Assembly (NCBI GenBank): GCA_977030845.1
Contig: OZ365113.1
Location: forward strand, 37,944,001-38,008,000
Length of the DNA: 64,000 bases
Direction of reading: 5' to 3'
Origin: Fimbriosthenelais zetlandica
Taxonomy: Eukaryota
Numbering within the stretch: the first letter of the stretch is position 1; every line of letters begins with the position of its first letter. Below are positions 28,022-52,097 of this stretch, one piece after another. The notes under the pieces are model-generated. The model was given only the letters and a program-made list of their open reading frames with translations, did no database searches and was not told the origin of the DNA. The position numbers were made by a program, and so were the translations under genes.

Positions 28022-31000
28022 TTAAGTGAGGTCTCTCCGCCTGTAGTATAGAAGGTAGGGGAAGCGAGTCTGTTCGTACTGGAGAACCTTTTGTTGTGAG
28101 ACAAGTGAGACTGTACTGTCGTCTACACGGACCCAGTTCTGGATGCCTTGATGGTAGATGTCGGCTGTGTAGTGTCCACCTATAGCTCGCATACCATGGT
28201 GGTTGACCACTGAAAAATAACAAAATAAAAGTTAGAATTAGATGATAAAATAGGAGAGAACACACAAGGCAGTGTGATTCCAGGTTAGTGTAATCTTTAA
28301 TGCCAATGCATTTCTGCTGTGGCGAAAAGTTTCAATGAAAGGAATGACATTCAAATGTTTGGCAAAGTGAACCAGGGACCCCCTGTATTCAAGTTGAACA
28401 CTCTCCCGCCTGAGCCAAAGCCCCACACCAAGAAGGTATAGAAGAAAGAATAGAAACAATCTTACCTGAGAAGAGTTCATAGACACGCTTAGATTGGGAA
28501 TACTTGGATTTGGCATTGGCTGACATCAAATCTAAAAAATAAAGAAAAATAATTCAATTCAAATTGAAGTATAGCTTAACAAATCTTCATGAAATCAAAT
28601 GAGTTTCAATTTTACTGACCTTTGCCAATGTTAAGTTCTAGCGGTACATCGATCTGTTTGCTAACTTTCTGTACACCTCCAGTTTTCTGGTAGATGAAAC
28701 ATTTGAGATGAAGAATGAGAACTGGAGGAAGTTCATCCATGGTGTAGCGGCGGTAGGCCTCCACCTGCAAGTAACAATCAGTCAAGAATTAAAATAGTCA
28801 AGAATTAAAATTGATATCTTCAAAAATTGTACCTTTAAATTTTTAGATAAAAAATTCAATTTTTTCCATATTATATTGGCCCCATAATCTAGGGTGGCCT
28901 AATTATATCTACGTCTATGTAATATTGAGGGGAATTTTGGTCATCTTTTAGATGAATGGTGTTCATACCTCTTGTTTATTGTCGTTGGTGTAGCCGTGTA
29001 GAGTTTCTTTACTGGCCAGAGCCTCCAGTGCTTCATTTACACTCGTTACTTTTTCATTCTGCAAAATAAGAAAAACCAGTTACAGTTAGTTCAGGATCCT
29101 CAGACTACACGCAGCACATAAATATAAACTCAGATCTAACTAACCTAACTAACATTTCAGGAGTTACTTAACATCTTTTGTAAAGAAAATGATAAGAATT
29201 ATAATATATTACGATACCTGTATGTCTAGTTGTAGAGAGAAGAAAGGTTGGAGGGTACACGACTCCTTGTGGCCTTGCTGATGGACAGTCGACCTTAATT
29301 GTCCACCAAACGTCTCTGATATCGGGGAATGACTTAATTTGGCCTGTACAGAAAATAATATTCAATTCATTTACATATAATATATCCCCATTTGGCATAT
29401 ATACGATATAACCAATACAATAAAGTGACAGCGAATATTTAACGCCATCACATACAAAAATGAAATAAAGATGGCAAGTTTATATGTTGTATGGGGTTTA
29501 ACGTCAATTTTTAACTACGCATTAGGTTAAGCCATATTCTTCACTTACACTTCTTGTAACAACACTTTTATTTTTGGGTCCAACCTGCTCCCACTGGTCG
29601 TCATCATCTTCGTTATCGTTAGCCGTCCCGTCGCGAGCGCTCCCGTTACCTGCTACATCCCCGTTCTCCTTTGTTTTATCATCTGCCAAAGAAAAGTAAA
29701 CATTTTAGTTAGTCGAACAAGCCCAATAGTAAAGCGTAAAATCAGGGGTCAATTTTTTTAATGAAAATAAAACTTTGTTTTAGTGCCTTTAGATCATAAA
29801 GGATTAGATAAATCACAGAAAACTTCTGGACAATTTTCTGTAAAAATAGTTATTTTTACATAATTTCCTCTAAAAAAGGAAGCCGGCACTCATTGACGAT
29901 TTCTGGTAGGAAACTAAAGCCTTTTTGCTCACCATTGCGGATGATATTAATACATGCGACCATCTCCTCGTGAAGGGCATTGAGCAGGACACCAAGGAAC
30001 TCCTCTGCATCTTCCTGCCTTCCTAACTGTAATGTTAACACAGTAAATGAAGTTAGCCTTGATCTATAAGAATTCACATTTTCAAAATAAAATCCTAAAA
30101 TAAAATAGAATTTTTGGAATTTCCAATGATCTCAGAGAACAGTTCCTCAAGCAGAGATCATACATCTGAAGATGAGCTTTCATTAAAGAGAGAAGAGAAG
30201 ATCGTACCTTGAACGAAGTACTTGACTGAATAACTTCTAACATTTTCAGGACGTTCACTGGCTCAAAGGGCGGCCCATAACGGATGTCTGAATTAGATCG
30301 TGAAGGTCCTTTACCCGCTGAAAGCAGAGGAAAAACATTATAACATGAGCAGAAAGATTTATATGCTGATAAATTAATGTAAAGATCAGAGAATTATTAC
30401 TTACAAGCTTTCTCGATGTATTTGAGGTTTTGGGGCGGCACTTCTGTAAATTCATTCACGAACTGGCTTCTGTAAACAGGAACAAACATGCAAATTAGAT
30501 TTAGTTTAAGAAGAATTAATTTATAATGACATTAAATTCAGTATGAAAGTAAATTGTACTGACATGCAGTCTATGACCGGGGTACTGGTGGGTCCTCGGG
30601 AGCCAGGTTTGAAGTTAGGCATGGCCTTCATGAGTTGATAGAATGCTGGACAGCCCAGCAATGCCTGCAGGGTCTTCACATAGTCAAGGTCACAAATACT
30701 CAACATCATGTTTCAAGAAATCATTACCTGCTTCAAGAAAGCATAGCCTGATTAAGAAAATCTTAACTTGCTCCAAGAAATCATAAACTGCTTCAAAAGA
30801 ACCTAGATTCTTGTAGAATTAGAAATCATAGCTTAGCTTACTTCAAGACATGTGCCATTCCCATTTTAAGGGGCGAGTAAAATTATCCTATTTTGCAATT
30901 ATATAAAATACGTATCTAAATAGGGCATAATTGGAGCACCTAATAATAAAGTATATGTAAATGTGAGTGAATTGTTAAAGGATACAGCATTGATGTAGCA

Positions 31001-34000
31001 CCAGTTTGAGCGGTTATAGAGACCTCGAGGCTGGAGGGACACAGGACTGTACTTATTAGCGTATTTCGACAGAAATTCTGTAAAAAGAAATCAAACATAA
31101 AATCACCAAAGGTATATGAAATTCTATACGAAGTTCATCATTAGAAGTGAAAGATCAGGGAACCCCTAATACATATGTTTATGATAACAAATTTTATCAC
31201 CACCAAATTTATCTATGATTCTGATTTCATCCCAATTCATTTCCTAGATTTATCTTTGACATTTTATCACGGTTGAACTTTGCTGATAACAATAACTTTC
31301 ACAAGAAAATAACCATAAGATTATTAGTCTATAAATTATCGGTATATAAATTCTACCTCACTTGTTTAAACTTCAGTGCATTCCTGTTTTAGAGCCAGTT
31401 TACTGACCAAGGAAATAGTGCTGTTAAAATACATTAAAAAAAAAATGAAAACCAGTTTAAAAAAAACAAATATGTAGTTCACCTCCTAGCTTCCTGGCTT
31501 TGCCGTCCTCGTCTATAGGTACTGTTTTCTTGTCGTCTTTCTCTTCACTCTTGCGTACAGGTTTAGTATTATTTACAGGAGATGGCTTCAGCTCGGGAGC
31601 AGGACTGGGCGGGGCGGGTTTGCTCTCACTTTTAAACAGAGATGCCCACACCATCTTGGGTTTGACGGGTTCGGTGACTGGAGGAGCCGGCACCTCTACC
31701 ACTTTAGTCTCTGATTGCTTGTTGTTGGCCTCCTTGGTTAGGGGAGGTGATGACGGGGTAGAGTTGGTCAGTGGTGTGTTGTTGAGGACGCTTGTTGAAC
31801 TGTTTGTCACGTTGACGGTGGATGTCGGGGTGGTTACGGTAACCCCAGCACTTGTAGAGGTTACCGCAGTCGCCGCAACGGTAACCGATTTCTCTTTCAA
31901 GTCCTCCGGGGGAAGAGGCGCGTCGTGAAACTCTTCAACTGGCTCCGCAACATCTTTTATTGTTTCCACGGAAACAACAACAGGCGTTGCCTGAGGTTTA
32001 GGAGCAGTTTTAGGAATCACGCTAGCTTTATTAGGGGGAGCACTTTCTGTCTTTTTCGCCTCCTCACTCTGTTTGAAACTAGGATCTACTTCAGATGACT
32101 GGGCATTCATTGTGGCTATATCTTGTACAGTACCAAAAGTCAACGTACCACTAAATGAAGCCTTTATACAGGTCCGTTCATCTTTATCTTTTTTAGTTTC
32201 GGAAACGTTATCCCCGACCTTGATCATAGGGGGAGCACTTTCCTTATCAACCACAGGGTCTTTTACAATATTTACATTATGATTTTTAATTTTAATAGGC
32301 GCCTGTCCATCGCCCTCTCCTATGAGAGGTGCGTTTTGAATTGTCTGGCCACTGTCACCACCTTGACAGCTCTGAGGTGGGGGTTGCACCTCCACTGTGA
32401 CAGGAACTTGTTCCTTCATTTCAGGTGACACAGGTTTATTAACATCAGGCTGTGGAGACGGGGCGGCAGGTTTCTGATTCCCAGACGCCATAGCCTGATG
32501 TTGTGTGTCTAGTTTATGTGGTGGTGACTGGGCTGTGATGGGAACAACAACAGCTGGTGGTGGTGGTGGTGGTGGTGGCTGTGGTGGTGGTGGTGCCACC
32601 ACTACAGGCTTGTGGGGGACATGTTGCACCATCTGGCCATGAGGCTGGGGTAGAGGAGGACCATAGTTAGGTATATTCTGAGGGGGCTGTGAATACATTA
32701 AGGGCATACGTTGCCCTCCTGTCCTTGCCACATCTTTTTGAACTGGATTAGCACTAGCCTGATTATAACTGTTATTTGGGTTTAAGGATTGTATTGCGAC
32801 CTGTTGCACACTGAGAGGCACATTTGGTGATGCCTGTGGGTGGGGTGGATGGTATCCATGGATATCCATCGGTCTGGGGTCCGGATACTGCTGGGTACCC
32901 ATTGGAGGCCCTCTCGGGGGTGAGCGCCCCATCTGAGGGGGCGCCATTGAGGGGGAGATGTTTGAGGGACTCATGGCCACTGGTCGGCCCTGTGGGGGTT
33001 GACCCATTCCTCCCATATTGCCATGGTTACCAGGGCCTACCGGCGGCTGCTGGTGGAATACAGGGTTCTGGGCAACATGAGGAAGGGTGTAAGGGTTAAA
33101 GGTAGCTCCGATCATCCGAGCCATCTCCTGCTGGTGCTGCTGAACTAGGTACTGCTGTTGCGTGCTGGCTTGCACGGATTGCTGATGTCTCTGGAACATC
33201 TGCATCTGTTGGACAGCCTGCTGGTGCATTGGATTGATCATGCTGGTGATCATAGGGTAGCTGACTGGGATATGCTGACCATACTGACTAGACATGACTG
33301 AGGCTTGTTGTGTGCCTGGTATGCCCACATAGCCAGCAGTGGCAGGGGATGACTCCATGGCCTGACGTACAGAAACCGCCGGTACTTGATACCCACCCAC
33401 GACTTGTTGAACCACTTGCGGACCAACTTTATTCTCCTGCTCACAGCGCTTGTAATAATCGGGCGGCCTGCGTTTTTTATTTCTACGCTCGTATGTTTTG
33501 CTTGCAGAGTTATTCATTTGAGCTGACTGCGCTCCTGGAGAAGGGGCTAGATTCTGTGTGGTTGTGTTACTCGGTCGGGTATAAATACCGTCTTCCACAT
33601 GGCCTCGAACCTGCTGAGGTGGCTCAACATCAGAACGTCTTTGTACATTATAGTCATGCTGGTGGGTGGGGCGAGGTGGGGGTGGGGGGTGGTGAGCAGG
33701 GGGGGAGCGCTCGTGTATACCAGGGGCTCCAGTATGGGTAGGGATGGGTGGTGGGAGGTAATCAGGAACCTGGTGTGGATAGTAAGCGTCTATGGGGACA
33801 GCCACTGGAGCTTGAACTTTCTCCTCCATTGGTTTCTCTCTTGGCAGTTCAGGAGGATCGCACCGTACTGGTTCTTGTACTGGTTTCCCAGTCTCATCAG
33901 TAGGGTGCACTGTCTCTGCAGGAATATCTGAAGCTATCTCTATCTCTTCAGGTATGGTTTCCTCTTTAACCAGTTCTGGTTTTAAGGTCTCTGGGATCAC

Positions 34001-36820
34001 GGGTTCAGAGACTTCGAGGGGATCTTCTAAGGGAAGGTTGCTGCTCTCGGTAGAAGTGGGTGGTGGGGGAGGCAAGCCATCACCGGCATCCTTCCTACAT
34101 GCAGCGGGCTCGGGCTCAGTTTTATTGTGGAGGCCTGCATCTAGCGTCTACAAATATAAAAAAAGCCACATTTATATATTAACACAATGTTAAATGTGAC
34201 AAAAATAATGGACATCTGACAATCAATGTAAGTACTTTGCTTAATAATCTAAAAAAATGAAACTATATATTCGAGAGTAGTCTTGGTCAGAAAGATATCA
34301 TATAACAAACTGATGGTCCAGAGAACGGGAGGTTTTATTTAGGGACATAATTGCCATAAGAAACTATATCCATTTCACAATAATAAGTGACATGTAGAAG
34401 TTGTCACTTGATGATGTCAGTTTCCATTTTTGTGTGAATTGCAGGAAACTCACTGGTTTCTAGGGCTTAAAACTTGAGGATATGAGACATGGATACAGAC
34501 TTGGAGTAAATAAAGTAGTCCAAAGTTATTACACTTTAACGAGGTTGGGAGAGAAGCTCATATTTTCCAGACATGCGATGCGTCTGTAGTACTAGTTAAG
34601 TAGAGGAACATCAAATTATCCAAGTTAACTTTTTAAACTTTTTATGACTATGCTCGGAGTAATTATATATTTTGCACAGCCTGAAAGGAAAGTTCAGGAT
34701 CTCGATCGTCAATTCTTACCTGAGTTGCTGTAGTTGTTAAGTTGGTTTTTGTCGTGGCAATAGATGCACGTGGTAGATGACCTTTAAAAACAGCAATAAC
34801 ATCTAGATGTAATAATATTATGGCGTGGGATGGTTTATTGGTCAATGGAGAAATCAAAGTTGCAGGTATCTAATTTTCAAAATTGATTGTCTAAAAAACA
34901 TGTAATAGACCAATTCGAGGAAGGGAAAGTAGCAAAAAATCACACAGAAAAAGAAAACAATTCAAACTTACACTTAATCCTAGTCGCTGGCTTCTCCCAA
35001 TACAACTGCAAAAATTAGAAAGAACAAAATTTCTTATTCAGAAATCAAAAACTATTGTTACTTATTTAAAGTACAATGGAAAAACGTCGCATATTACAGG
35101 TCATCTTTCCTCCGAATCACATTCTGATTCCATACAGGGCTCCCCTTAATTTTGGGACTGAGCAAGTATGGTCTCTATAGCCTCTATTGAGGTGGTCGGT
35201 TTAGAGGGCAGGGGGAATGTATTCTAAATATATGAGAAGGAAAACTGGACCAAACGAACATGGTCGGTTTAGGGAGGTAGTTGGATTTGGCAAGAGCACT
35301 GCATTAACAAAACTATTCAAATTATAGGAATATTTTATGAATATTCTTATGTACAGTAAATAAAATTGACCAGTGAATGAAAGAAAATACAAGTGTTGAG
35401 ACCTACCTCAAGCCGGGCACTCCCAGACCGTAGAGAGTTGAGGAGAAATTCTTGATCCTCAGGCCCCAGGTCATCGAAGAACCCAAACTTCAAGCCCTGA
35501 ATAAAAGAGTATAACTTAATCAAATCAATGGACAAATTCAATATGCAAATTCTAAATATTGAAACACAAATCTCGTGGTTGTAGTAGTTCTGGGATCTTA
35601 TATCTAGCTCTTGGATAAGGCATATTTCTGATTTCTACAGCATACATGTATTAAGGGGTTAATTGACTAACTGGATTTTATCAATGATTCATTTTAAGAT
35701 GGGGAGGGACCTATATTATCAAATATCAGAACAGGCCTTGGCTCTAAATCATAAACATTTATGAATAATTTACTGAAATGTTAAGATGTAAACTAGATCT
35801 ATAAGTTTTATTGTTGGATCATTCATGAAGAAAAACTGACAAAACACTTGTAGTCTATTGGTAAGAATAAATTATCAAAATGAACAGAAATAAAAGATAT
35901 TCTCAAGCGTTTCTTTTTTACTGATCAGGCCCTGTTATAACTCCTACCGAAAGTATTAAACAAAGAATTTTCTTGCAATGTCAATCTACGTATGATCTCT
36001 TTTCTAAATGTACGTCAATTTTACACAAAGTGACAAGTGACAGGTCTGGCAATCTACATTTATGTCATTATGAGTCATCAGTGTCACAGACTCACAGGTG
36101 CTAAAAGTTTAAGGTTCAAACTCATGAAATAACAACAGTATATTTGCATCAACACTGCCTGCAAATTAACCGAGTGCACCCTCCCCTAACAAATAGTTAT
36201 TCCTTTCTTTTATCAAGGAAATTCCCCTCGTGACAGATAAGTCAGTTCAGCTCCAACAACAGTGACAGTATTGCATTGCGTCACGAATCATTATTCCTAA
36301 ATGACCAAAACAGTATTTTTCTTTGCCATTGTTCCTGCACTCTACCAAACACTACAAGCTTTTAGCTTCACAATATAACGTGTAAGGGGATGGGAAATTT
36401 TGATCAGTAAGAATTTGAAGTAGTAGGGACAAAATGATCATGATAATCACTTCCCCGACGATCTGGGTAGTTCAGACCGGTCCCAACTTCTCTTCAAAAC
36501 TAAAACTTCTCATGCACAAACGGTCATGGGTCAATTCCTAGAAGTTAAACTCTTATGGCAACATTACTATAAGACCCATGATAGACCAGGGAAGATTTTA
36601 TTAAAACAATGCAAATTTGCAAAACACTTTTCCGTGCCGGCGACCGGCGGTGTCGAAGTGTCACTGGGCGCCAGACAGTAGCACCCAGGTCAATTTGAAG
36701 ATCTATGCCCACCGACAGGGAGCTCCTATCACATAAACGCCCCCTCTTTGTGTGAAACTGATACCATAGTCTGTTTGGACTTAGTTTCATAGAGAAACTT
36801 ACCTGATTTGTAGAATTCAT
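28022..36820 (-). CDS. USP10: Ubiquitin carboxyl-terminal hydrolase 10, about 1362 aa, up to 16 coding exons
   Basis: Exons (5' to 3'): 36820-36803, 35496-35407, [35005-34972, 34781-34720 less certain], 34147-31483, 31077-30986, 30673-30564, 30469-30405, 30317-30208, 30026-29933, 29682-29549, 29343-29218, 29058-28969, 28764-28620, 28531-28466, 28209-28022; all phases join. Cys box [64 protein letters not shown], His box [21 protein letters not shown]10-type KKRRPPDYY and WASLF motifs are present. Confidence 0.95.
30674..30985 (-). other. U12-type (minor spliceosome) GT-AG intron of USP10
   Basis: 5' splice site GTATCCTTTAAC at 30985; branch point CCTTGAC at 30689-30683, about 10 nt from the terminal AG; no polypyrimidine tract; joins NWCYINA to TLQALL in frame. 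Confidence 0.9.
30712..30800 (+). repeat. Degenerate 20-bp tandem repeat inside the USP10 U12 intron
   Basis: TTCAAGAAATCAT..CTGC-like units start at 30712, 30732, 30752, 30772 and 30792. Confidence 0.75.
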
Positions 36821-40054: not shown

Positions 40055-43000
40055 TTACTCGCAGGACGCTCGTTGCTTGCCCTTGCTTTGTGGAGGTGTA
40101 ATAATTCCGGGGATGTTCTTTGTGTAGTCAGGACTCGCCCGGGATGAAGTTTCTACTTGGGTTTGCCGCGCTTGTGATCGCTCCTACAAAGAAAACCAAA
40201 AATTATTAGTTATCAAATTTAATATTCCACTTCAAATTAACTTTCAATTTCTGTAGAATTTAATTCTTTGTTCCAAACATTGTATTTTCCAAATACACAT
40301 GTACCTCTGATTTATTCTCCTGAATTAAAATGTTTAACGCAAAGAAATCATTGCAAATTACTGTCAATGCTCGAGGGAAACGTTTATTGGAAATTTCTTT
40401 GTGTCCAGAAAAGGAAGATTACTTACCAACAAAGACAGATCGACGCTGTGCGTTTGGATGTTGTGAGCATCTTCAGATGCAACTTGAGAGAAGAATTTTA
40501 ATTCTTCAGGGCCGACTTCCCTTAGAGTTGTAGCAAACGGTGTCATCCATGTGACGCATGCTGCTATGTCTAACCACTGATAACCTGTTGAAACAAAAAC
40601 AAATCATTTTAAAAACTGTTCCTTTACTTCACAATCAATCTCATTAACTTGCTCTATACTAAATCTTTACAAAATAAACGAATTATTTCCGAACTGGAAT
40701 TGAGAAATAAGCTTACCTGATACTGCTAGCGCTACAGCCTCTGATGTGATGTGGTACATGGCAGAGGTGGCGAGTATACTATAGGAAAACTGTAGACTTC
40801 CAAAGTCTAGGAAACACAGGTCTAAAAGCTGGAAGAAAAGAAACAAAACATAAGTCAAACTTACAAGGAGAAGGAATCAACATTCATAGGTACATGTGCT
40901 AGTAGAATCTCTGCCTATCCAAAAACATTTAAATTTAAATTTTGAGGAAGTTGATAGATTATATGATAAATTGATTCCTATATAAGATACTTACTCTAGC
41001 TATTTGGATGAAGGCATGTTGGGAATATTGGGGGACAATGAAGCTCTGCTCTTTCTCCTCCATACTCTCTAGGTTCACCAGTTGCATATATACATTGATC
41101 CAGGAGTTGACAGTTAATGGAGACAAGTCCCAGTTGAGCACTTTGAGCAGCACCAGTTCCTGCTCGAGGATTTCTTTTTCTGTACAGGCACCATCGGTCA
41201 CATAGGCGAACTCCGCTAACCGGGGTGGGTAGATTTCCTGAAGGAATAAAGAAATGTAAGCTTTCATGAAAAACCGTCATAGAAAATTCCTTATGGCCTT
41301 TTTTTTTAAACTTGAAATTTGGCTTAAGAAAGTATTCTTAAATGTTAGCAGCCATTAATAACAGAATTCATTAAAAAGAACTCATTTAAAAGAGAGTAAA
41401 TGTATCCAAAGAATTAAAATACAAGCAGTCAAAAGTTATAATTATTCAGATAATACATTGTAAGCGCAGGTACGCACCTCTAGTTTGGCTGAGATGAAGA
41501 GAGATGTAATTCCTATAAGTTGTAGTTGTTGTTTGTGAATGCTTGTTGATTGTGAGAGGTAGCGGTCTATGAAGTCCACGGCCAGGTAGAACGTCTCCCT
41601 GTGAAGTCTGTACACCTCACACACCTGTAACAAAGCAAGTAATTATTTAGCAAATTGATCACATATATTTATCAAATTTCTGTCATCATCTCTTTTCCAG
41701 ACCCAGTCAAAAGAAAAGCACCTTTTCCAATCCAAAGAAATGTACCAAAGTACCGGTAAGCCATATTTAGCCTTACAGCCTTTATTTAATAGCTATGAAA
41801 AATTATTTTTCTCAGTCAAATTTTCATTAGATATTGGTGAAATGAATAATTGTACATATACTCAGTTTTAACACTTAAATTTTTAGTTTTTTAAATTGAC
41901 TATAACATTTTTAAATTGAATATAAAATTAAGTCAATTTAAAAAAATACTATTAAAGTTAAACCTACCTCTATTAACCAGTCAAGAAGTATACTCCTCAT
42001 ACGAGCTTGTAAAGTGGCGTGTCGCTTCAATAAGCCGTAATCTCGGACGTACTTCTCTTCCTTCTGTAACATACCCGTCCACAGCTCCTTGGAGTCAGCC
42101 CAGTGTAGACTGGGGAGCGGGGACTGGCGCATTGAGATGGGGGTGGTGAAGTAGTTCTGGAACCTGAAGGTAGATCCCGTCAGGGCATGTTTAGGCGTGG
42201 TGCTTGGTTCTGGACACCGACTAGAGGTTGATGTGGTGGTGGTGGTGGTGGTGGTTGATGTGGTGGCATGGTTCTCCTCACCCGGGCTCTTGGTGGGACT
42301 TGTGGGCACGATGGCGGACGTGGCAACTGACGAGTGAAGCGAGATGGGGATCCATTGATTCTGTAAGAGAAAATCAATAAATTAATACATCGATAAATAC
42401 AGGAAATATTACCAATAAAATTCCCAGACCACGTGTCGAAGAATTTCCCAGGAAGCTATCTTTTCTTGAGTAATGGCACCAGGACATTCTAAAAAATATA
42501 TCTTTTCTCCAAAATGATACAATAAATGTACATTTCAAAACCTACTTATAAGAAATTGGGGTTTTAGCATCAGAAGAGATAGTCGGTATTGAATGAGGTT
42601 GAAATTAACACAGATGAATGAATTTTTGGAGGTAAAGACCCCCATTAGTGTTAGTTTCTGTTGATAATTATCCCACATTGTCACCGCGTGGTGTCATTTT
42701 AGGATTAGTTTCATAAGAGGATTAGTATCTTCCCACCGAGTCTTCTGAAACATGTCATTAAAAGACATCAAATAAAAGTCCCCTCTTATATGAACCCTTT
42801 ATTTTCACCTAATCATCTATGAAAATACTGTCAAGAAAATAGGTGTCAACTCCATTCATCCTAAAAAGAACTATACCTGGTATTACCATGATGACATTTT
42901 TAGATTTAATAACAGACAAATTTAAGTCACAGAATCACTCAATGAACATGAGCTTAAAATATATCAGAAAATTGAAATGAAACGAAAATTTCACCCAAAA

Positions 43001-46000
43001 TAAATGGATGGAGGACCATGTGGTTTTGCTATATTTAGAACGCTGTCTCCAGTCATAGGATTCTGCGGTCGGGGAGAGCGTGCAATGTGACGTCATCGGA
43101 CATACATGGGGTCAAATCCCCTGGTGTGTACTAGGGGAAAATACCACTACCCCTGTATAGTAGGGTCAACTCGTACATAGAAGGGTCAGCCTCCCCCCCC
43201 CCCCCCCCCCCCCCACAACTCCTTGCCCCATAAGACATTATGTAAGATGCCCAATATACACACCAAAATCCATAAAATGTAAATTTCCTTTATCTAGATT
43301 ACTCAATGACTATCTCGCTAAGTAAAATGCCACTTAAAGTCTCTTTCAAGTAGTGTCATTTACTTCCAATGTGGAATTCATCATCTTAAGAACTTTGGCA
43401 CGTGAGTGCATGCCATGCCACCGGAAACAAGTTTTTTCCCTCTCAGACCAATTATTTTCTTAATGCTTCACATTTACCGCCGCCATTTTTAAAACCCATT
43501 TCTTCCAATATACCAATTGGACTGAGGAAACTTTCTTAATGATAAAGAGATAACTGGGAGATTTCGGCAATTGGAAATCAGCAGGAGGAATGGGCAATCC
43601 ATCATTGGTAGGTATCAGGTAGGGGTGTCCTTATCTATAAGGTAGATTACTTTACATAGATTATATTCACTCACCGAGCTCTCAGAGACTGTAGATTGAG
43701 GTACACTGTCTTTGGTAGGGATATCCTCATCAGAACTTTCCTTACAAGCCTGGCGAGGTTTCTCTTTAGATTGTTCTTGTGATTTTTCTCTACATGTGTC
43801 AAGATTAGAACGACTAGAGGTATGACTGGACCTTTGGGTTAGTCTTCTAGGAGGTTGCTTAACTCTCCTTGAACTGTTTCTCCTGAGAATTCTTGGTCTT
43901 TTAGCTGCTGCAGCTTTCTGTTCTTCTGCTTTATTCTCCTCCTCTGTCTTGGCCTTTTTAGCCGGGGGTGGACCGCCTTGGGCCTGGTCAAGGACGACCT
44001 CTGTTTCGCCTGAGTCGGGGACTCCCATCTTCATTTAGTGACCGTGGGGGAATAGGTCTGGAGTGACGGGATGTGGGCCTGGGGAAGGCCGGGAGGGGAA
44101 GTGACACCCGGACGGGAATGAATGGTTTTAGGGAAGGAGAGAGTACCAGCTCCCACCTTCTCCTCCAGCAGCCTCCGGGGGGGATGCCCCTTGTCACCTG
44201 TATTTTTATGATGTTGGAAATGCACAGGTAAAACCCAGGCTGAGTGTGGAGTAGCGCTGGGAGGCTGAACAGCCTGGTGTATTAGCCCTAGGGAAGTGCA
44301 GGCTACTCCAAGCCAACACCTGATAAGGCTACAGGTGTGTTCTACTCCCAGTATAGCAATGAGAGAGACTGGGGACTATACACACTGAATCACCAATGTC
44401 CAAAATAACTCTAAAGTCCCAATATAAATCCTAATGTATAAGTATAATCCAATGGTAATAAGTCACTTTCTCGGTAAAAAATTGAGAATGAAGGTTTTGG
44501 TGTAGCGTTGACTAGTATGAAGGCATGTATAAGGTGTCCCCCATTAAGCCGGCCGCCTAAAATAAGTGGACCTTTCTCCTCGTCCCGCGCTGGCCTACAA
44601 CTTAATGTTGCATGGGTGGCTGGGGTTTGGCGCGGGGGTGCAACAATGTGGTGGTATGGACCGTCCGATCATCCTTGCCTTTACTTAAGCGGGTAGGTCC
44701 TTCTCCAAGGAACAGATGAATGAAAGTGTGTCCAAATATTCAGCACCAAGCTCTATATACTAGAGATAAATCCACATGGTGGAGTTAGAGGGGTAAGATG
44801 GAGTGAGGGAATGGGTCCACTATTGTCCTCTCTCTGTGTGTAGGTATCTCCGTGGGTGAATGAATACATGTGACCTAGCCTAAGCCTAGGAGATGACTGG
44901 GTAGCAGCTGGTCTGGAAACGTGAGTGTATGCGTGAGGGGTGGGTGGGTGGTGTGTGTGTGCAACAGCATGACCATATACCCCCCCCCCCCCCTAACCCA
45001 CCCATACGCCCCGCCCACCCACCCACCTGCGGGGCTTGGTTCAGCATCTCCCGTACCTGTAGCTGCGACCAACCTCACCCCCCCCCCCCCCCCCCCAGCC
45101 CCCCTCCCACCGCACGCATACATTCACACCCCCACTACTCTTTAGGCCCGAGTTTTAGGCTTCAGGAGGTCACCAAAAGTTGGAGTCGGCCTTATGTTAG
45201 GATGCGGGGGTGGGTGGGGGAGGTCACATTAAAAAGGGCTACTAATTTCAGTCAATCTATGAATTAAACCAATAGAAAATCAACTATTCTTCTGTGGCAG
45301 AAGTTTTTTGAAATAAACAAAAATCCGGTTTTATGCCGAATTATTTGGCAAAAAAGGCGGCAAAATCTGCGCAAATTTATTTCGAAAAGTTTAAAGCTCA
45401 AAAAGCGGGAAATCTCGGGCTTCTGCGCAAATTTAGCAAGAACAGGAATTCTGATGAATTGAACATAAGGGTGGCTGAGGAAGGGTAAAGGTGGGGGCCC
45501 AGACAGGTAACCCAAGTTTGGTAGTGACCCCCCTTGTTCTCTAGTAGTATGACAACTAGTGGTCAATTGTCATTGTTGTCATGTCATTGTTTGTGGAGAG
45601 ACCATGGCAAGGTGGGAGGGGTGGGGGGTGAGGGACACAGAGGGTCAGACAGGGGGAGCGACTTTTTAGCGACATCAGCGCCTCTCACACCTATACATTG
45701 TGATGTAATAATTCACAATTCATACATGTAATATTTCTGGCGCCTCAATTGACACTTGTTGCTCCCACTCATTTACATATTGTTCGCCTTGCATTCGTCA
45801 GCTTTTCCCTAAAAGGGAAACACAAATCCCCCTCTCCAAGTAAGATTTTCACCCACTTGAAGACTTCATTGTCTTGAACTTCAATTCTTTCATCCGTATA
45901 TCAATGACTCAATTCAATAATTTAATTTGCCTTTTTCCCTTTCTCGAATCAAAGTAGACTAAAGGCCGAAAGGGAATTAATTTAATTAAGGAATTTTATT

Positions 46001-49000
46001 CCGTTTCCCGTACCGGAAAATTATCTTTAATTGGAGACATATATAAAAGAACAGATAAAATATTTCCTGTTTCGGGTCTCTTTTACAAATTCCAATGCAC
46101 CCTTCTCACTATAGGAGTCTGGGGGCCATTACAGCCCTCTTCCTGCCTCGCACCCATTGGACAGATACATCCCGTTCTGGGTAATTTGTTATGCGTTACT
46201 ATGACAACTAAGTATGGCTGAGAGTAGAATAATAGTGAGGGTAGAACCAGCGGGTGGCTGGGGTACAGATGGATGTCCACATGCACCATAAAATGCAACC
46301 ACAGCATATAATGCTAGACTAGTGCATCACCCTCATGCGTTTAGGGAAAACCAAATTTTTTTCCCCAAAATCTTTCAAAACTGAAATTAACTACACTGTG
46401 CACAAAAGAAGAAAATTTATTAATATTTTGGATACAAATTCCCCCAATTTATTGAGTAAATTTGCTCACGAGTTTTCTGATTTTTAAGTTAAACCCGGAC
46501 CAGCGCAAGTCTTGCATCTCGAAGGTCCTGACATACCTAATTATGGTACAAATCATTCCCTATCGATGACATATTTGTTAGAGGTCCAATTAAGACATCT
46601 TTCCAGCAGAGAGGAAGATGCTGAGGTAACTAATGTATAGAGAAATATCTGGCATGTTAGTAATTAGCACCAAGTTTTCAGACTGGACGGCATTGCTGAG
46701 ACGCAGGACGTAGGAAATGAGGGGTAAGATTATGTAAGACCAGACTAACAGATGTGCAGTGAAGGAGAAATCATTTGTGCAGTTCCTTGGTGAAATTTCA
46801 GGGGGAGGAGATGGGTGTTGGGTTAGACTGAGCTTCGGTGTACAAAAAAGAAAAGCCCCCCAGCAAAAATTATATTAGCCTAAAAGGTACTGGGATACAT
46901 CTATAGGCTTAAAAGGTTATAGGGGCGCAGAGATCATAGATTAGAAAGATATTATAGAAATGTCTCCATTACAAGTTTTAAATCTGAGAGAAATTATGCG
47001 AAAATGCAGAGATGGAGAAGATTGCCATTAGGGCATCTAGTCGCAGATTTATACCAAGGGTATTTCCGCTAAATTCTGGGGGTGTTGGCCCCTGTTAAAT
47101 CAGATTCTGGAAACATTATTGTAGGGAATTCACAATTTGTCTAATGAATTTCCAGAGGGAAAACCCGTCAACGGTTCATTTTGCAAATCGATATTGATAA
47201 AAACTTTCATTTATCATGAAAGTATTCCCGTGCTTATTCATGTCTTTGAGCTTTCCTCAGAGTTACGCCATCAAGGTTCTATTTATCAGGGATTCATTAG
47301 ATATATGAGGCTTGGAGGGGGGGGGGGGGGGGGTATTTCTATGCATTTCCTCTCCTTTGATAACCAGAAGTAGGCTTCACTTATTGTAGTCAGAGCTCTA
47401 TCAACATCCAGCCATACCCGTACATAAAGCTGAATACTTCTGATAAACATGTGGGTTTGTTTGCCAGAACCAGCGACTGTTCACTTCTAAGTGATGCTGA
47501 GCGCAACAGAAACCATGCGGTCCGACAACAAGGCCAGACAGACTGCTGAAATCTTTTGAGGTTTCACAAGACAAACGTCCTAAAGAAGTCAGGAAGCTGG
47601 CTTCCAGACCCAGGTTAGCCAAGTTTGGTTTGGAGTTTGTTCATTTCAGAATAAGTATCATGGGTTAGCTCCCTGAGCTTGAAACTTCCATAACCACTGA
47701 GAAAACTATGGTCCGATGCTTAGTAAGAAAAATGTTGGAAACATTTCAGTGCACTACCCTATAATATAGGGGCATCTTCTCAATACAAATATTTTCATGA
47801 TGTACATGACAGGCCTATAATGGACAGGTACAGGACTGCGAACTTTTCTACGAAATAAATTTCACCCAATTTCGACCAGTGAGGTCAAACAGTCGAATTG
47901 AGCGGCCCTGTATTAGAAGAAGATAAATTGCCTTGGCCTTAAACGTGAAGACCGACCTGTGAAGTCAAGCCTTGGTCCAGGAATTAAAGGCGAGAAGACT
48001 CAAAATGTGGAAGACAATCTGCGTCCAGCAATTTTTAGTTTCAACTTTGTCAATAATGTCATAATAAAAGATTGACAAAGGCAAAGTACCTCTACTATAC
48101 CTACTAATACAGTTAGGCCTAAGGGAGTTCCCATTAATAATTTTATTCTTAATCCCAGACACTATTACCTTGAGACAGGTAATAAAATGCCATGAAGTCA
48201 GCTCTGAGCCGAGGTAGAAGTCTGGTTATTCAGGTACCGAGACGAAGTGTATTTTTCTATGTATAGGTGCAGTAAAAGGATGTTATATCCCAGAAGCCCT
48301 CGGGTGAAATATGCCGAGGTGAGACTGGGGGACCTGCCGCATGTTGCACTTAGCACCGAACCTTAATGGCCTACATCCCAGCATAGAAAGTTACAATCAC
48401 ATCTTCACATGTGTTTCTACTTTATTTTTCCCAAATCAGAACTTCACTTTCCATTGAATTTTAGGCAGTTTAACTTTAAGAGTCAATTTTGAAAGGATTA
48501 TTATACAATTGAACAGCCTTTCTCCACTCACGGACTATAATTGGTCAGAAATATTGTTCTGTGCATATCATTGATTTTGAATTGTCTCAGAAAACAATTG
48601 TTGAGACTAGCTCTGACTATAATTGGTCAGAAATATTGTTCTGTGCTTACCATTGATTTGGAATTGTCTCAGAAAATAATTGTTGCGACTAGTATGGGGA
48701 GGAGCAATGCATGGGCTGTATCAATGGGTTTCAGTCAATCAAGGGGTTTTAGACTGAAATATGGTATTTACGGGGAGGGGCTTATGATTATGTAAGATGG
48801 GTATCATAATTAAGCTTAAAGCCCCTTAGGCCAGCCCACAGCTCTGTATCCGAGGCAAGAGGGTATATAGTATACCCATTTCCTGTCCATCCATAGATAC
48901 AAGAGACAGAAGGCTAGAGAAGGAGGGGACTGCAGCAATGACCAAGTTGTGGTCACCTCAGCCAAAAATAGAACCAGCGTAGGACCTGAGTGATGGAGGA

Positions 49001-52000
49001 GGAGGGTCTGGTATATAGGCTTGGACTGTGGTGCAGGGGTCAATGGGGCAGTGTGACCCACTATTCAGGTCACTATGAACCAGATAGCTTCCCCCGCCCT
49101 CCTCCTCACACCCACCCACCCACCCCCCCGCTCTGCAGGGCTCCCTCAACATGTCAGGCGGCACCGAATACATAGCGATAGTGGAAAACCACAAGGCCAA
49201 TAGAGCTTGTAAGTATATTTCTTGCATGTCAACTTATGTTTTTGATTTCAATCTAACAACTTTACAAGTTAACATGCATTAGAAAGCGCATGTTGCAAAA
49301 TATTTTTCTAATATAAATGGATGGGTTCTTTAAAAGGTTCCCACATAAATTGGAAAATCCAATTCCATAACTTCCCTGGAATTCCAAAACCAAAACATGG
49401 TAATTTCCAATGGAATTTTTTGCGGGTTTTTGGCGCACAGGTTCTTGTAATATAAACATCGTTGTTTTACTGTTTTACCACCTTAAAACAATAGTGTACC
49501 ACGCCGTAAGTAGCAACTGTATAAAGTTGATTTTCCATAACTTTTCAGAGGCGTCCCAAAACTTTTGCTAAAAATAACAGATTTCCATAACTTATTCTTC
49601 CACCATATTTTTTCAAGGATTTCCCCAAACCGTGGGAACACTGTCTTTAGAACCTCTTGAAACTTTCTCAAATGAAGATAATTAGCACTGATAATAGGCG
49701 GGGGTGGGTGGGATGGGGGGAGCGGGAGGGGGTGGGGGTGAAGAAAGGGAGGGGGGAATAGGGGTAGACCTTGATGTGTCGAGGAGTCGCCAGTGAAAAT
49801 GAAAGGTAGAACGAGTCCCATGCCGGTATACTGGCGTCAAATGCCAGGACCAAGATATTGCACGTGTTTGGTTTAATAATTAACTTGTCATATTGCATTC
49901 AGACAAGAACATTGTCGCCGGATGGGACACTCATCATTGTTCTTATTGATTGTATACCATTCAGTTAACAAACCAGAGTCAATTATCAGCTACATAATGA
50001 CCGCATGTCTACATCATTTCCATCAAACTTGTCCACTAAAAAGAGCAGTACAACAAGTGGTAAATTGTAAGCCCCAGTCTCTTGAGTTTGTTTCGATTTG
50101 AGATTTGAGGTAAGACAGAATCCTAGTGTGTCAAATACACCTGTACTATCAGGTCAGCCCGCATATATCTGGTTCAGTGATTTCCATAATATTCAAGATA
50201 GTCAACTTTTATGAGTTTTCTTCTTCAGGAATTCCATTCAGTCGGGCATTTTAACCCTTCAGGATCAAGAACAAGTTGTTTCTATTCTAAAAATTTCAAT
50301 TCTGAAATTGCAAACAATCCTAAGCTTTGTACCCAGTCTGTCCTGTTGCCCAGATTTAGTAGATACTTTACTGAATAAGAGCCAATTGAGATCCAAATTT
50401 CAAGATAGGACAGGGTGAGGTACATGTAGGTGGGTGATAAAAAGATCTAGGCAAAATGTAATGAAGAATTTGCTAAAATGAAACAAGGAAAAGGTCCATA
50501 CAATACTATACATTATTATACAGACGACATAGTGATGAAAGTAATAAATGGAAAGTCATGCTGACAAGACACTTTGAAGGTAAAAAAGATCAAGTTGATC
50601 AATAAAACTTACACTTGGAGGTTGCACACATCAACAAATATTTTTCCCACACTTTGGACACATTAATTTTCCTCCCACTCGCTTTATGAATAATAGTAAT
50701 ACCACGACATAACATGCCCACACATGCTCAGGATCAAAAATACATAACTGGGGTATGAAACTTATTGGCATTGGACCCAATGATGTAAGGAGTCATTTAT
50801 AGCAAGTAAATCAACAGAAGTTTTGCAGACATGTGAATAGGATGGAATATAAAATGTGCCAAATAATAAAGGTCATCACATTATAGGTCATAACATATGT
50901 AGAGTATATCCCAATGAAATACTTGCATGCAAGTGACATGGAAAAGAATCAGGGTGAAAATATGTAATACCTTCTTTTCATATGTAAATATCCAATGCGC
51001 TGCGTAAGGGGAAAAAGACAATTTTTTTTATAACCTTACCACCTACTACATTATTATTTTAGTGTCTTGAGAAAATGATTCCCATGGACCAATACACTAA
51101 CACAATAAAAACTGGATACTTATGCAATACACAAAACAGGCTCTGTATTTATATAAATTGCTGATTGGCACATTATTTTTAACGAAATACATTTTGATTC
51201 GAAACCAATATATATTACCAATAAAAGATACAAAATATCGATAAGACAATCGATCACCCTTGGTAGTCCTTCCTGGTTGCATATTCACGACATCAATATG
51301 CTCAGAGAGGCATTGTTTCCAAGCAATAAATTTCAATGAAAACTTCAAAATAATTAAAAAACCGGCGCACAGGCCCCTCGCCATAACCTTGGCTATTATT
51401 TGCAATCACTGTCAAGTTTCTGGGTTTCGATGGTCAAATGCTATTGAAAAATTATTGAAGAGAGAAATTTGGCGGGACTGCTCATGGCGCCAAGCCTGGC
51501 CTTAGATTGGCCTAGATCAGAAATTATAAACATCCAAGTTCAACATGAAAAATAATGCATGTCACTCACCTGGATCAGGAACTGATTCCTTCTCCTGGAA
51601 ACTTCATTAGTTCTTTCCAATTCCTGAAAATTTAAAATGTGAAATATTAGTAGGTAGTTGATTTTTGGACATTATAAATGAAGTTCATCTGAGGAGGGAC
51701 AAAGGGAGGAAATGTCAACCCAGATAACTCAGGCGGGGGAGGCTGACCCACATTCCGTATTTCAGCCCAGGGACACCCGAAATAAACTCATTTTACAATC
51801 TCTAAAATTCAAGGCAAAATTTCTCACCTCTTCTGCTTTTCTTTTCTTAGGTAGGGCTACCGATGTTTGAGCTCCATCTTCTGTCTTCCTCCTTGCAGGT
51901 CGTAAAATACTTCTGCAAAAATATGCACAGATTTTTAGTGGAGTTATTTCACTATCAACCACAGCCACGCAGGAGAACCGGTCGGGACAAAGGATGCGTT

Positions 52001-52097
52001 GGAATGTAGGGCTTTAGGAATATGCATCTTCAGCAATTTGCGATAAAAAAATTCACAAAACGTCAAATAAATATTTCACTAACCTTCTTCTTGGCAT
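40055..52097 (-). CDS. CCNE: G1/S-specific cyclin E, canonical isoform 444 aa, 9 coding exons
   Basis: Exons 52097-52084, 51912-51828, 51623-51570, 42360-41968, 41624-41478, 41237-40995, 40828-40717, 40584-40427, 40183-40055, phase-consistent. Cyclin box [54 protein letters not shown]-terminal IITPPQS phosphodegron. The N-terminus has a KKRK NLS and [16 protein letters not shown], as in invertebrate cyclin E. Intron 3 is 9.2 kb. Confidence 0.96.
43675..44034 (-). CDS. Putative alternative first coding exon of cyclin E (120 aa, MKMGVPDS...VSESS)
   Basis: ATG directly preceded by an in-frame TAA; 120 open codons; consensus TCG|GTGAGT donor in phase 0, matching the phase-0 acceptor at 42360; contains basic NLS-like clusters. 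No expression evidence is available. Confidence 0.65.
48533..48692 (+). repeat. Tandem duplication with 82-bp period in cyclin E intron 3
   Basis: GACTATAATTGGTCAGAAATATTGTTCTGTGC...AATTGTCTCAGAAAA...TTGTTG.GACTAG occurs at 48533 and at 48615. Confidence 0.92.

What the first reader, a model, noticed from the sequence alone, without database searches (positions are those of the whole stretch)
43675..44034. Hidden alternative N-terminus for cyclin E inside its 9.2-kb intron
Seen: a 120-codon frame opens at an ATG directly after an in-frame stop and ends at a consensus GTGAGT donor in the same phase (0) as the acceptor of the shared exon at 42360. Splicing would give a 513-aa cyclin E in which the canonical 51-aa leader (KKRK NLS) is replaced by an unrelated one with [21 protein letters not shown] and an acidic Ser-rich stretch. 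Known: Drosophila cyclin E has maternal and zygotic forms that differ only at the N-terminus. Inference: an internal promoter makes a second isoform with different localisation or stability. A possible non-coding leader exon ends at the CAG|GTACGG donor at 45057.
Basis: partly seen in the sequence, partly recalled or inferred. Interest (0 to 1): 0.75.

Follow-up and report, generated by a model that had tools for sequence, protein, structure and literature searches.

The report
Conserved alternative first exon of cyclin E
Inside the long intron of an invertebrate cyclin E gene lies a protein-coding exon, kept by selection in a second distant species, that would give the cell-cycle protein a different N-terminal end, as is already known in fruit flies. 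No RNA data could be obtained to show that it is used.

Summary
On the minus strand, a 120-codon frame (44034-43675) starts right after a TAA and ends at TCG|GTGAGT in phase 0. That matches the phase-0 acceptor of the shared cyclin E exon at 42360. The canonical protein is 444 aa and the alternative one 513 aa.

The frame is not a chance ORF:
- **Orthologue found.** One distant relative (Logan genomic contig L002) has the same frame about 1 kb upstream of its own cyclin E exon 4, with the same donor and phase. The rest of the intron cannot be aligned.
- **Selection on the protein.** In the first 66 codons, changes fall 14/16/40 on codon positions 1/2/3 (pN 0.20, pS 0.84). The last ~50 codons are free in sequence but stay open.
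- **Start codon.** The conserved start is the second ATG (44028), giving 511 aa.

Other upstream blocks are conserved, among them 44244-44179 and 45035-44820.

Not shown: no sequencing run was listed, so splicing, the promoter and expression are untested. A third, more distant species shows no such exon. Both leaders carry basic NLS-like motifs, so nothing here indicates a change of localisation.

Verdict: a real, conserved alternative 5' coding exon. It is a new member of a known kind (Drosophila CycE maternal/zygotic isoforms).

The parts
43675..44034 (-). Alternative coding 5' exon of cyclin E. It has 120 codons from the first ATG (44034) and 118 from the conserved ATG (44028). It encodes a basic, Ser-rich, probably disordered leader with two conserved motifs ([15 protein letters not shown] and [14 protein letters not shown]).
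   Evidence: frame. (orthologous ORF in L002, E 5e-17). (pN 0.20 / pS 0.84; codon-position differences 14/16/40, p=1.3e-4). (single copy in own genome). (no secondary structure, pLDDT 59).
43669..43674 (-). Splice donor GTGAGT after TCG, phase 0.
   Evidence: TCGGTGAGTG is identical in the relative at the end of its frame, within flanks that are otherwise unalignable. The frame beyond it is not conserved: 19 more codons here, 2 in the relative.
41968..42360 (-). First shared cyclin E exon (131 aa), with a phase-0 acceptor after cag at 42361-42363. It would receive either the canonical exon 3 or the alternative exon.
   Evidence: Its end matches Pfam Cyclin_N. The relative has the same acceptor and phase at L002:6550.
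52084..52097 (-). Canonical coding exon 1 (ATG at 52097, 14 nt).
51828..51912 (-). Canonical coding exon 2 (contains PKKRKAEE).
51570..51623 (-). Canonical coding exon 3, with its donor in phase 0. It is conserved in a more distant species (L005:5128-5190).
44179..44244 (-). Conserved non-coding block 145-210 nt upstream of the ATG. It holds CATCATAAAAA followed by ACAG|GTG and GGGCATC. It is either a TATA-like core promoter or the branch/acceptor region of the exon (AG at 44199-44198).
   Evidence: 79% identity over 70 nt in an otherwise unalignable intron. Its function is inferred.
44820..45035 (-). Conserved G-rich/CA-rich non-coding block. It includes CAG|GTGGGTGGG (exon-end candidate 45027) and AGACCAGCTGCT (an E-box). 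It is a candidate promoter or leader region for the alternative transcript.
   Evidence: about 70% identity over 95 + 110 nt. Its function is inferred.
46146..46244 (-). Conserved non-coding block 2.1 kb upstream of the alternative ATG (core GTAACGCATAACAA, plus a CCAAT). It is a candidate regulatory element.
   Evidence: 80% identity over the 55-nt core.
40055..41624 (-). Remaining shared cyclin E exons: 41624-41478, 41237-40995, 40828-40717, 40584-40427 and 40183-40055 (with stop). They include the cyclin box and the C-terminal TPPQS motif.
   Evidence: All are conserved in L002.

Best explanation
The stretch is a genuine alternative first coding exon of the cyclin E gene. A transcript that starts inside the 9.2-kb intron would be translated from the conserved ATG at 44028, or from 44034. 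That transcript would arise either from a promoter just upstream of the exon or from a short upstream leader exon. The exon would be spliced from its donor at 43675 to the phase-0 acceptor at 42360.

The product would be a cyclin E of about 511-513 aa. The ancestral 51-aa leader (MPRRRS...PKKRK...) is replaced by an unrelated, disordered, basic and Ser-rich leader of 118-120 aa. The cyclin box and both phosphodegron-like motifs (PTSPTK in exon 4, TPPQS at the C-terminus) stay the same.

Shown:
- the exon's anatomy;
- its single-copy status in the genome;
- its orthologue in a distant species at the syntenic place;
- purifying selection on the first 66 codons;
- maintenance of the open frame, donor and phase.

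Inferred:
- that it is spliced to exon 4;
- that it has its own promoter;
- that the new leader changes regulation (phosphorylation at RRNSS, partners, stability or timing of expression) rather than nuclear import, since both leaders have NLS-like basic clusters.
For: (1) Anatomy. ATG follows an in-frame stop, and 120 codons run to TCG|GTGAGT in phase 0, matching the acceptor at 42360.

(2) Orthologue. A phmmer search of 1.84 billion representatives gave one hit, P0001 (E 5.4e-17), starting at query residue 3. It lies on genomic contigs L002/L003. Its frame of 115 codons (5197-5541) ends at the same TCG|GTGAGTG. It is followed 1 kb downstream by cyclin E exon 4 with the same phase-0 acceptor, and then by the later exons.

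(3) Contrast with the intron. Apart from cyclin E exons, only the alternative exon and three upstream blocks align between the two species. The rest of the intron is unalignable. Synonymous sites of exon 4 are near saturation (pS 0.66).

(4) Coding signature. In the first 66 codons pN is 0.20 and pS 0.84, and differences fall 14/16/40 on codon positions 1/2/3 (chi-square p=1.3e-4). In [14 protein letters not shown], read codon by codon from the alignment, ten codons differ and all ten changes are synonymous.

(5) Open frame. The unconstrained second half stays open to the donor in both species. Shuffles leave it open about 4% of the time in each species, and the whole exon 0.2-0.3%.

(6) Closed upstream. 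An in-frame stop precedes the ATG in both species (0 and 26 codons upstream), so the frame cannot be entered from an upstream coding exon.

(7) It is single copy in the genome, so it is not a repeat. There is no long frame on the opposite strand in the window.

(8) Precedent. Drosophila CycE has maternal and zygotic isoforms that differ only at the N-terminus (PMC10158999, citing Richardson et al. 1993).
Against: - There is no transcript evidence. No sequencing run, RNA or DNA, was listed for this sequence, so the junction 43675^42360 and the start site are unobserved.
- Only one comparator species carries the exon.
- A more distant species (L005/L006) has the canonical leader exon less than 1 kb from exon 4 and no detectable alternative exon in the 8.8 kb upstream of its cyclin-box exon. 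The exon is therefore lineage-restricted or too diverged there to detect.
- No protein with this N-terminus joined to a cyclin box appeared among 1.84 billion representatives. Isoforms may, however, be hidden inside clusters represented by the canonical form.
- The C-terminal half of the exon shows no constraint on its sequence (pN 0.65, pS 0.74).
Confidence: 0.78

Rival explanations
1. It is a separate small gene nested in the cyclin E intron. An unspliced mRNA would encode a basic, disordered protein of about 117-139 aa that merely shares the strand with cyclin E.
For: The frame has its own ATG and reaches a stop in both species (139 aa here, 117 aa in the relative). Conserved upstream blocks could be its promoter. 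Another follow-up on this genome reported a nested gene in an intron, which is a lead only.
Against: Conservation ends exactly at a perfect, conserved donor (TCGGTGAGTG). The tail after it differs in length (19 against 2 codons) and in sequence. The donor's phase matches exon 4 in both species. No conserved 3' end or further conserved block lies between the exon and exon 4.
Confidence: 0.08
2. It is an internal cassette or 'poison' exon. Transcripts from the canonical promoter would splice into an acceptor at 44198/44197 and out at 43675. This would close the canonical frame, and the exon would act as a regulatory non-productive or uORF-bearing isoform rather than provide a new N-terminus.
For: A conserved ACAG|GTG with an upstream conserved tract sits at 44244-44197. 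Read from the sequence: entering from canonical exon 3 (phase 0) runs into a stop at 43988, and entering from exon 1 gives a stop straight away.
Against: A purely regulatory exon would not show selection on the protein in the frame that starts at the internal ATG (14/16/40; pN 0.20 against pS 0.84). Nor would it need to keep that frame open and in phase with exon 4 in both species.
Confidence: 0.07
3. It is the first exon of another transcript that skips cyclin E exon 4 and joins exons elsewhere, for example a downstream gene.
For: None directly. Without RNA the splice partner is only inferred.
Against: In both species the next conserved sequence downstream on this strand is cyclin E exon 4, with a matching phase.
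Confidence: 0.04
4. It is a chance open frame lying over a conserved non-coding element such as an enhancer or lncRNA.
For: Frames of 100-117 codons occur by chance elsewhere in this intron. The peptide is low in complexity, with no Pfam family and no Atlas hit.
Against: Third-position excess of changes (p=1.3e-4). Synonymous-only changes across the [12 protein letters not shown] block. Indels only in multiples of three. Conserved ATG, donor and phase.
Confidence: 0.03

Closest known systems
Drosophila melanogaster Cyclin E maternal (type II) and zygotic (type I) isoforms
   Same: One cyclin E gene yields proteins that differ only at the N-terminus through alternative 5' exons. One unique leader is short and the other about 110-120 aa. 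The cyclin box and the C-terminus are shared (PMC10158999, citing Richardson et al. 1993).
   Different: No sequence similarity to any other protein in the library was detected. The fly case has transcript, in situ and translation evidence, whereas here there is only comparative genomic evidence. Which form, if any, is maternal is unknown.
Vertebrate cyclin E1/E2 N-terminal variants (my own knowledge, not tested here: the 15-aa longer cyclin E1 form from an alternative first exon, splice variants, and low-molecular-weight forms made by proteolysis)
   Same: The variation is confined to the disordered N-terminal region ahead of the cyclin box, which carries the NLS.
   Different: Those variants lengthen or trim the same leader. 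Here the whole leader is swapped for an unrelated one (no BLASTP alignment to canonical exon 2). By my reading, the canonical leader here (MPRRRS..., PKKRK) is the one that resembles vertebrate cyclin E N-termini.
N-terminal proteoforms made by alternative promoters, in general
   Same: An alternative first coding exon with its own ATG, a closed frame upstream and the same phase as the shared acceptor.
   Different: Nothing unusual in mechanism. The point of interest is the gene concerned and the selection on the new leader.

Membership tests
Cyclin E (the host gene) | Cyclin_N domain and best matches to cyclin E | tested here: met
   Pfam PF00134 matches the end of exon 4 (E 4.2e-5, 23.7 bits against a cut-off of 23). 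Exon-6 relatives carry PF00134/PF02984, and one is named G1/S-specific cyclin-E2-like. MRSILLDWL and a C-terminal TPPQS are read directly from the model.
Alternative first coding exon of cyclin E (as in Drosophila CycE type I/II) | Own ATG with a closed frame upstream, and a donor in the same phase as the shared acceptor | tested here: met
   The same holds in the relative.
Alternative first coding exon of cyclin E (as in Drosophila CycE type I/II) | The exon is protein-coding and under purifying selection, at the syntenic place in another species | tested here: met
   pN 0.20 / pS 0.84 and 14/16/40 over 66 codons. The frame, ATG and donor are kept, and the intron around it is unalignable. Only one comparator species carries it.
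Alternative first coding exon of cyclin E (as in Drosophila CycE type I/II) | A transcript that joins the exon to the shared exon (junction 43675^42360) | not testable with these tools
   The look-up of sequencing runs listed no run for the exon or for 41938-44034, so read laying could not be used.
Alternative first coding exon of cyclin E (as in Drosophila CycE type I/II) | Own promoter or start site, and stage- or tissue-specific use (maternal against zygotic) | not testable with these tools
   There are only conserved upstream blocks (44244-44179, 45035-44820, 46244-46146) and E2F-like motifs that are not conserved in position.
Alternative first coding exon of cyclin E (as in Drosophila CycE type I/II) | Sequence homology of the alternative leader to the fly isoform-specific leader | tested here: not met
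   phmmer against 1.84 billion representatives found only the relative's ORF. The resemblance is therefore one of gene architecture, not of descent. Caveat: isoforms may be hidden inside clusters.

The most novel reading that the evidence does not exclude
The exon encodes a lineage-specific regulatory module. It has two strictly conserved motifs, an AKKAK-type NLS and [12 protein letters not shown], which holds a basophilic-kinase site (RRNS). This module would define a germline or early-embryo form of cyclin E, arisen independently of the Drosophila maternal/zygotic pair. That would be a convergent solution for running cleavage cycles with a differently controlled cyclin E.
Probability: 0.2. 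Interest if true: 0.6.

Novelty: new member of a known kind. Interest (0 to 1): 0.42.

Why it matters
Cyclin E sets entry into S phase. Its N-terminal region carries the signals for import and part of its regulation. In flies, a switch between N-terminal isoforms accompanies the maternal-to-zygotic transition, and its meaning is still open (PMC10158999).

A second, unrelated animal lineage with a selected alternative leader would give an independent system for asking what such leaders do. The two conserved motifs are concrete targets for mutation. In practical terms, the exon should be added to the gene model. Its public annotation could not be checked; none of the 1.84 billion representative proteins searched joins this leader to a cyclin box.

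Tried and rejected
- **RNA evidence.** Two look-ups for sequencing runs (the exon alone; 41938-44034) listed nothing, and one call failed twice as busy before that.
- **More relatives of the exon.** A word-index search with the peptide and another with the two-sequence profile gave only P0001. Full-length isoforms (about 511 aa) lie outside that tool's length range.
- **Other species via the cyclin-box exon.**
  - L004 and L007 have too little upstream DNA.
  - P0004 came without DNA.
  - L005/L006 reach far enough upstream but show no alternative exon.
- **Family and fold searches.** Pfam gave no family for the leader. The Atlas feature search gave no usable hit. AlphaFold on the two-row alignment gave no secondary structure, pLDDT 59 and pTM 0.12. 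This fits disorder but rests on a shallow alignment, and no fold search was run.
- **Duplication of the canonical leader.** No BLASTP alignment to canonical exon 2. Rejected as detectable paralogy.
- **Repeat or transposon origin.** Rejected, because the exon is single copy in the 447-Mb genome.
- **Antisense gene.** The relative has a 181-aa frame on the opposite strand, but the window has none longer than 52 aa there. Rejected.
- **E2F sites as promoter evidence.** The motif is enriched in the window (10 against 2.0 expected), and three copies lie upstream of the exon. None is conserved in position in the relative. Inconclusive.
- **Taxon.** The Atlas taxa for the cyclin-box exon were uninformative.
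- **Literature.** Searches for DmcycE gave nothing, and one search was badly framed.

Full report
**1. What is in the sequence**

The cyclin E gene lies on the minus strand.
- Its canonical start is split over three short exons (52097-52084, 51912-51828, 51623-51570). Together they encode a 51-aa leader that begins MPRRRS and contains PKKRK.
- A 9209-bp intron follows. The next exon begins at 42360 after ttctcttacag, in phase 0.
- Five more exons carry the cyclin box and a C-terminal TPPQS motif. The shared part is 393 aa and the canonical protein 444 aa.

- TAA at 44037-44035 is followed by ATG at 44034.
- 120 codons run to 43675 and are followed by GTGAGT.
- Joined to 42360, this gives 513 aa.
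- The window contains no N.

**2. Is it more than chance?**

By length alone, only mildly. It is the longest stop-to-stop frame on the sense strand of the intron, at 139 codons. Frames of 117, 114 and 102 codons also occur there. Shuffles of its own bases stay open 0.2% of the time. It is single copy in the 447-Mb genome, so it is not a repeat.

**3. Comparative evidence**

A phmmer search of 1.84 billion representative proteins returned a single hit, P0001 (117 aa, E 5.4e-17). It aligns from query residue 3. P0001 is an ORF on genomic Logan contigs of another species, L002 (12.1 kb) and L003.

In L002:
- The frame starts at 5197 and runs for 115 codons.
- It ends at TCG|GTGAGTG (5541|5542), the same donor in the same phase.
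- About 1 kb downstream, cyclin E exon 4 starts after tttttcag at 6550. Its first 22 residues are identical to the window's, and it is in phase 0.
- All later cyclin E exons follow in order.

The locus is therefore orthologous and syntenic.

The two species are far apart. In exon 4 the proportion of synonymous differences is 0.66, against 0.09 non-synonymous. Intron sequence is not alignable at all. Between 53000 and 36000, the only blastn matches are:
- the cyclin E exons and 3'UTR pieces;
- the alternative exon;
- blocks at 44244-44179 and 46209-46155;
- with a more sensitive setting, also 45035-44820.

**4. Coding signature**

- In the first 66 aligned codons, differences fall 14, 16 and 40 on codon positions 1, 2 and 3 (chi-square p=1.3e-4). 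pN is 0.20 and pS 0.84.
- [15 protein letters not shown] and [14 protein letters not shown] are invariant at the protein level.
- Read codon by codon from the alignment, [15 protein letters not shown] carries six synonymous changes and [14 protein letters not shown] ten.
- The remaining ~50 codons are essentially unconstrained in sequence (pN 0.65, pS 0.74). Their indels are multiples of three, and the frame stays open up to the conserved donor in both species. Shuffles achieve this in about 4% of trials per species.
- Beyond the donor there is no conservation. The frame runs 19 more codons here and 2 in the relative.
- This pattern fits a coding exon that ends at a splice donor. It does not fit a chance ORF or a non-coding conserved element.

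**5. Start codon and upstream region**

- The window's first ATG (44034) corresponds to ACG in the relative.
- The second ATG (44028, aagATGg) is conserved (gagATGg) and has the better context. The likely product is therefore 511 aa.
- In both species an in-frame stop lies upstream of the ATG (0 and 26 codons), so the frame cannot be a continuation of an upstream coding exon.

Three upstream blocks are conserved:
- **44244-44179.** It holds CATCATAAAAA, then ACAG|GTG and GGGCATC. It can be read as a TATA-like box 24-30 nt ahead of a start site. It can equally be read as the branch/acceptor region of the exon.
- **45035-44820.** It holds CAG|GTGGGTGGG (exon-end candidate 45027) and an E-box, AGACCAGCTGCT.
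- **46244-46146.** It has a conserved CCAAT.

I cannot decide between 'promoter directly upstream' and 'short leader exon plus acceptor at 44197' without RNA data. E2F-type motifs are enriched in the window (10 against 2.0 expected). Three lie at 44626, 45357 and 45405, but none is conserved in position in the relative.

**6. The leader itself**

- It matches no Pfam family and has no Atlas neighbour.
- It has no similarity to the canonical leader.
- AlphaFold gave no predicted secondary structure, with pLDDT 59 and pTM 0.12 on a two-row alignment.
- It is rich in S, E, K, R and P.
- By inspection, AKKAK and KRPR are NLS-like basic clusters. RRNS fits the R-R-x-S consensus of basophilic kinases. 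SSDED fits a CK2-type site, though that part is not conserved. These are inferences from motif knowledge, not tests.
- The canonical leader also has KKRK, so a change in nuclear import is not the obvious consequence. A change in regulation, or simply in promoter control, is more likely.

**7. Limits**

- No sequencing run, RNA or DNA, was listed for this DNA. The junction, the start site and the expression pattern are therefore untested.
- Only one comparator species carries the exon.
- A more distant species (L005/L006, cyclin box about 60-70% identical) has the canonical leader exon at L005:5128-5190 and exon 4 within 1 kb of it. It shows no alternative exon in the 8.8 kb upstream of its cyclin-box exon. 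The exon is thus lineage-restricted or diverged beyond detection.
- The protein libraries showed no full-length cyclin E with this leader. However, isoforms may be hidden inside 50% clusters, and the word-index tool cannot see proteins of that length from a 120-aa query.

**8. Comparison with what is known**

The architecture is that of Drosophila CycE. Its maternal and zygotic transcripts use different 5' exons and give proteins that differ only at the N-terminus, by 12 against about 119 unique residues (PMC10158999, citing Richardson et al. 1993). No sequence homology with any other protein in the library was found, so this is a parallel in gene design, not a shared ancestral exon.

**Verdict**

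This is a real, conserved alternative coding exon and very probably a second cyclin E N-terminus. It is a new member of a known kind. It is of moderate interest until expression data show when the isoform is made.

Noticed in passing
window 42215-42256 (minus strand, cyclin E exon 4): The Thr-rich run ([14 protein letters not shown]) in the disordered part of exon 4 falls in a 14-codon gap of the alignment with the relative. It looks like a recent low-complexity expansion close to the PTSPTK phosphodegron-like motif.
   Followed up: partly
window 44626-44633 (+), 45357-45364 (-), 45405-45412 (-); whole window: The E2F-type motif TTTSSCGC occurs 10 times in the window against 2.0 expected. None of 100 shuffles reached 10. 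Three copies lie upstream of the alternative exon, but none is conserved in position in L002.
   Followed up: partly
window 46146-46244: An isolated conserved non-coding block deep in the intron (core GTAACGCATAACAA, plus a CCAAT). Its core is 80% identical to L002:3290-3344, and the surrounding intron is unalignable.
   Followed up: partly
L002:5040-5585 (minus strand of the locus): The relative has a 181-aa open frame antisense to its alternative exon. The window has no counterpart longer than 52 aa. It is probably a mirror frame of a stop-poor coding region.
   Followed up: partly
L005:5128-6938 and L006: In a more distant species the canonical leader exon 3 lies less than 1 kb from exon 4. 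Exon 4 also appears to be split: residues 1-33 match weakly at 5948-6046 and residues 60-132 at 6720-6938. The long intron that hosts the alternative exon is therefore not universal.
   Followed up: partly
window 45074-45106 and 44980-45000: Long G runs (about 20 G) flank the conserved block upstream of the alternative exon. Comparable G runs occur in the relative (L002:1471-1495 and about 4340-4375).
   Followed up: no
window 31457-34075 (minus strand): An 872-aa open frame, rich in Pro and Gln, forms a very large exon of the neighbouring gene. The frames just downstream of it, from about 29856 to 30077, look like the ubiquitin-specific protease part.
   Followed up: no
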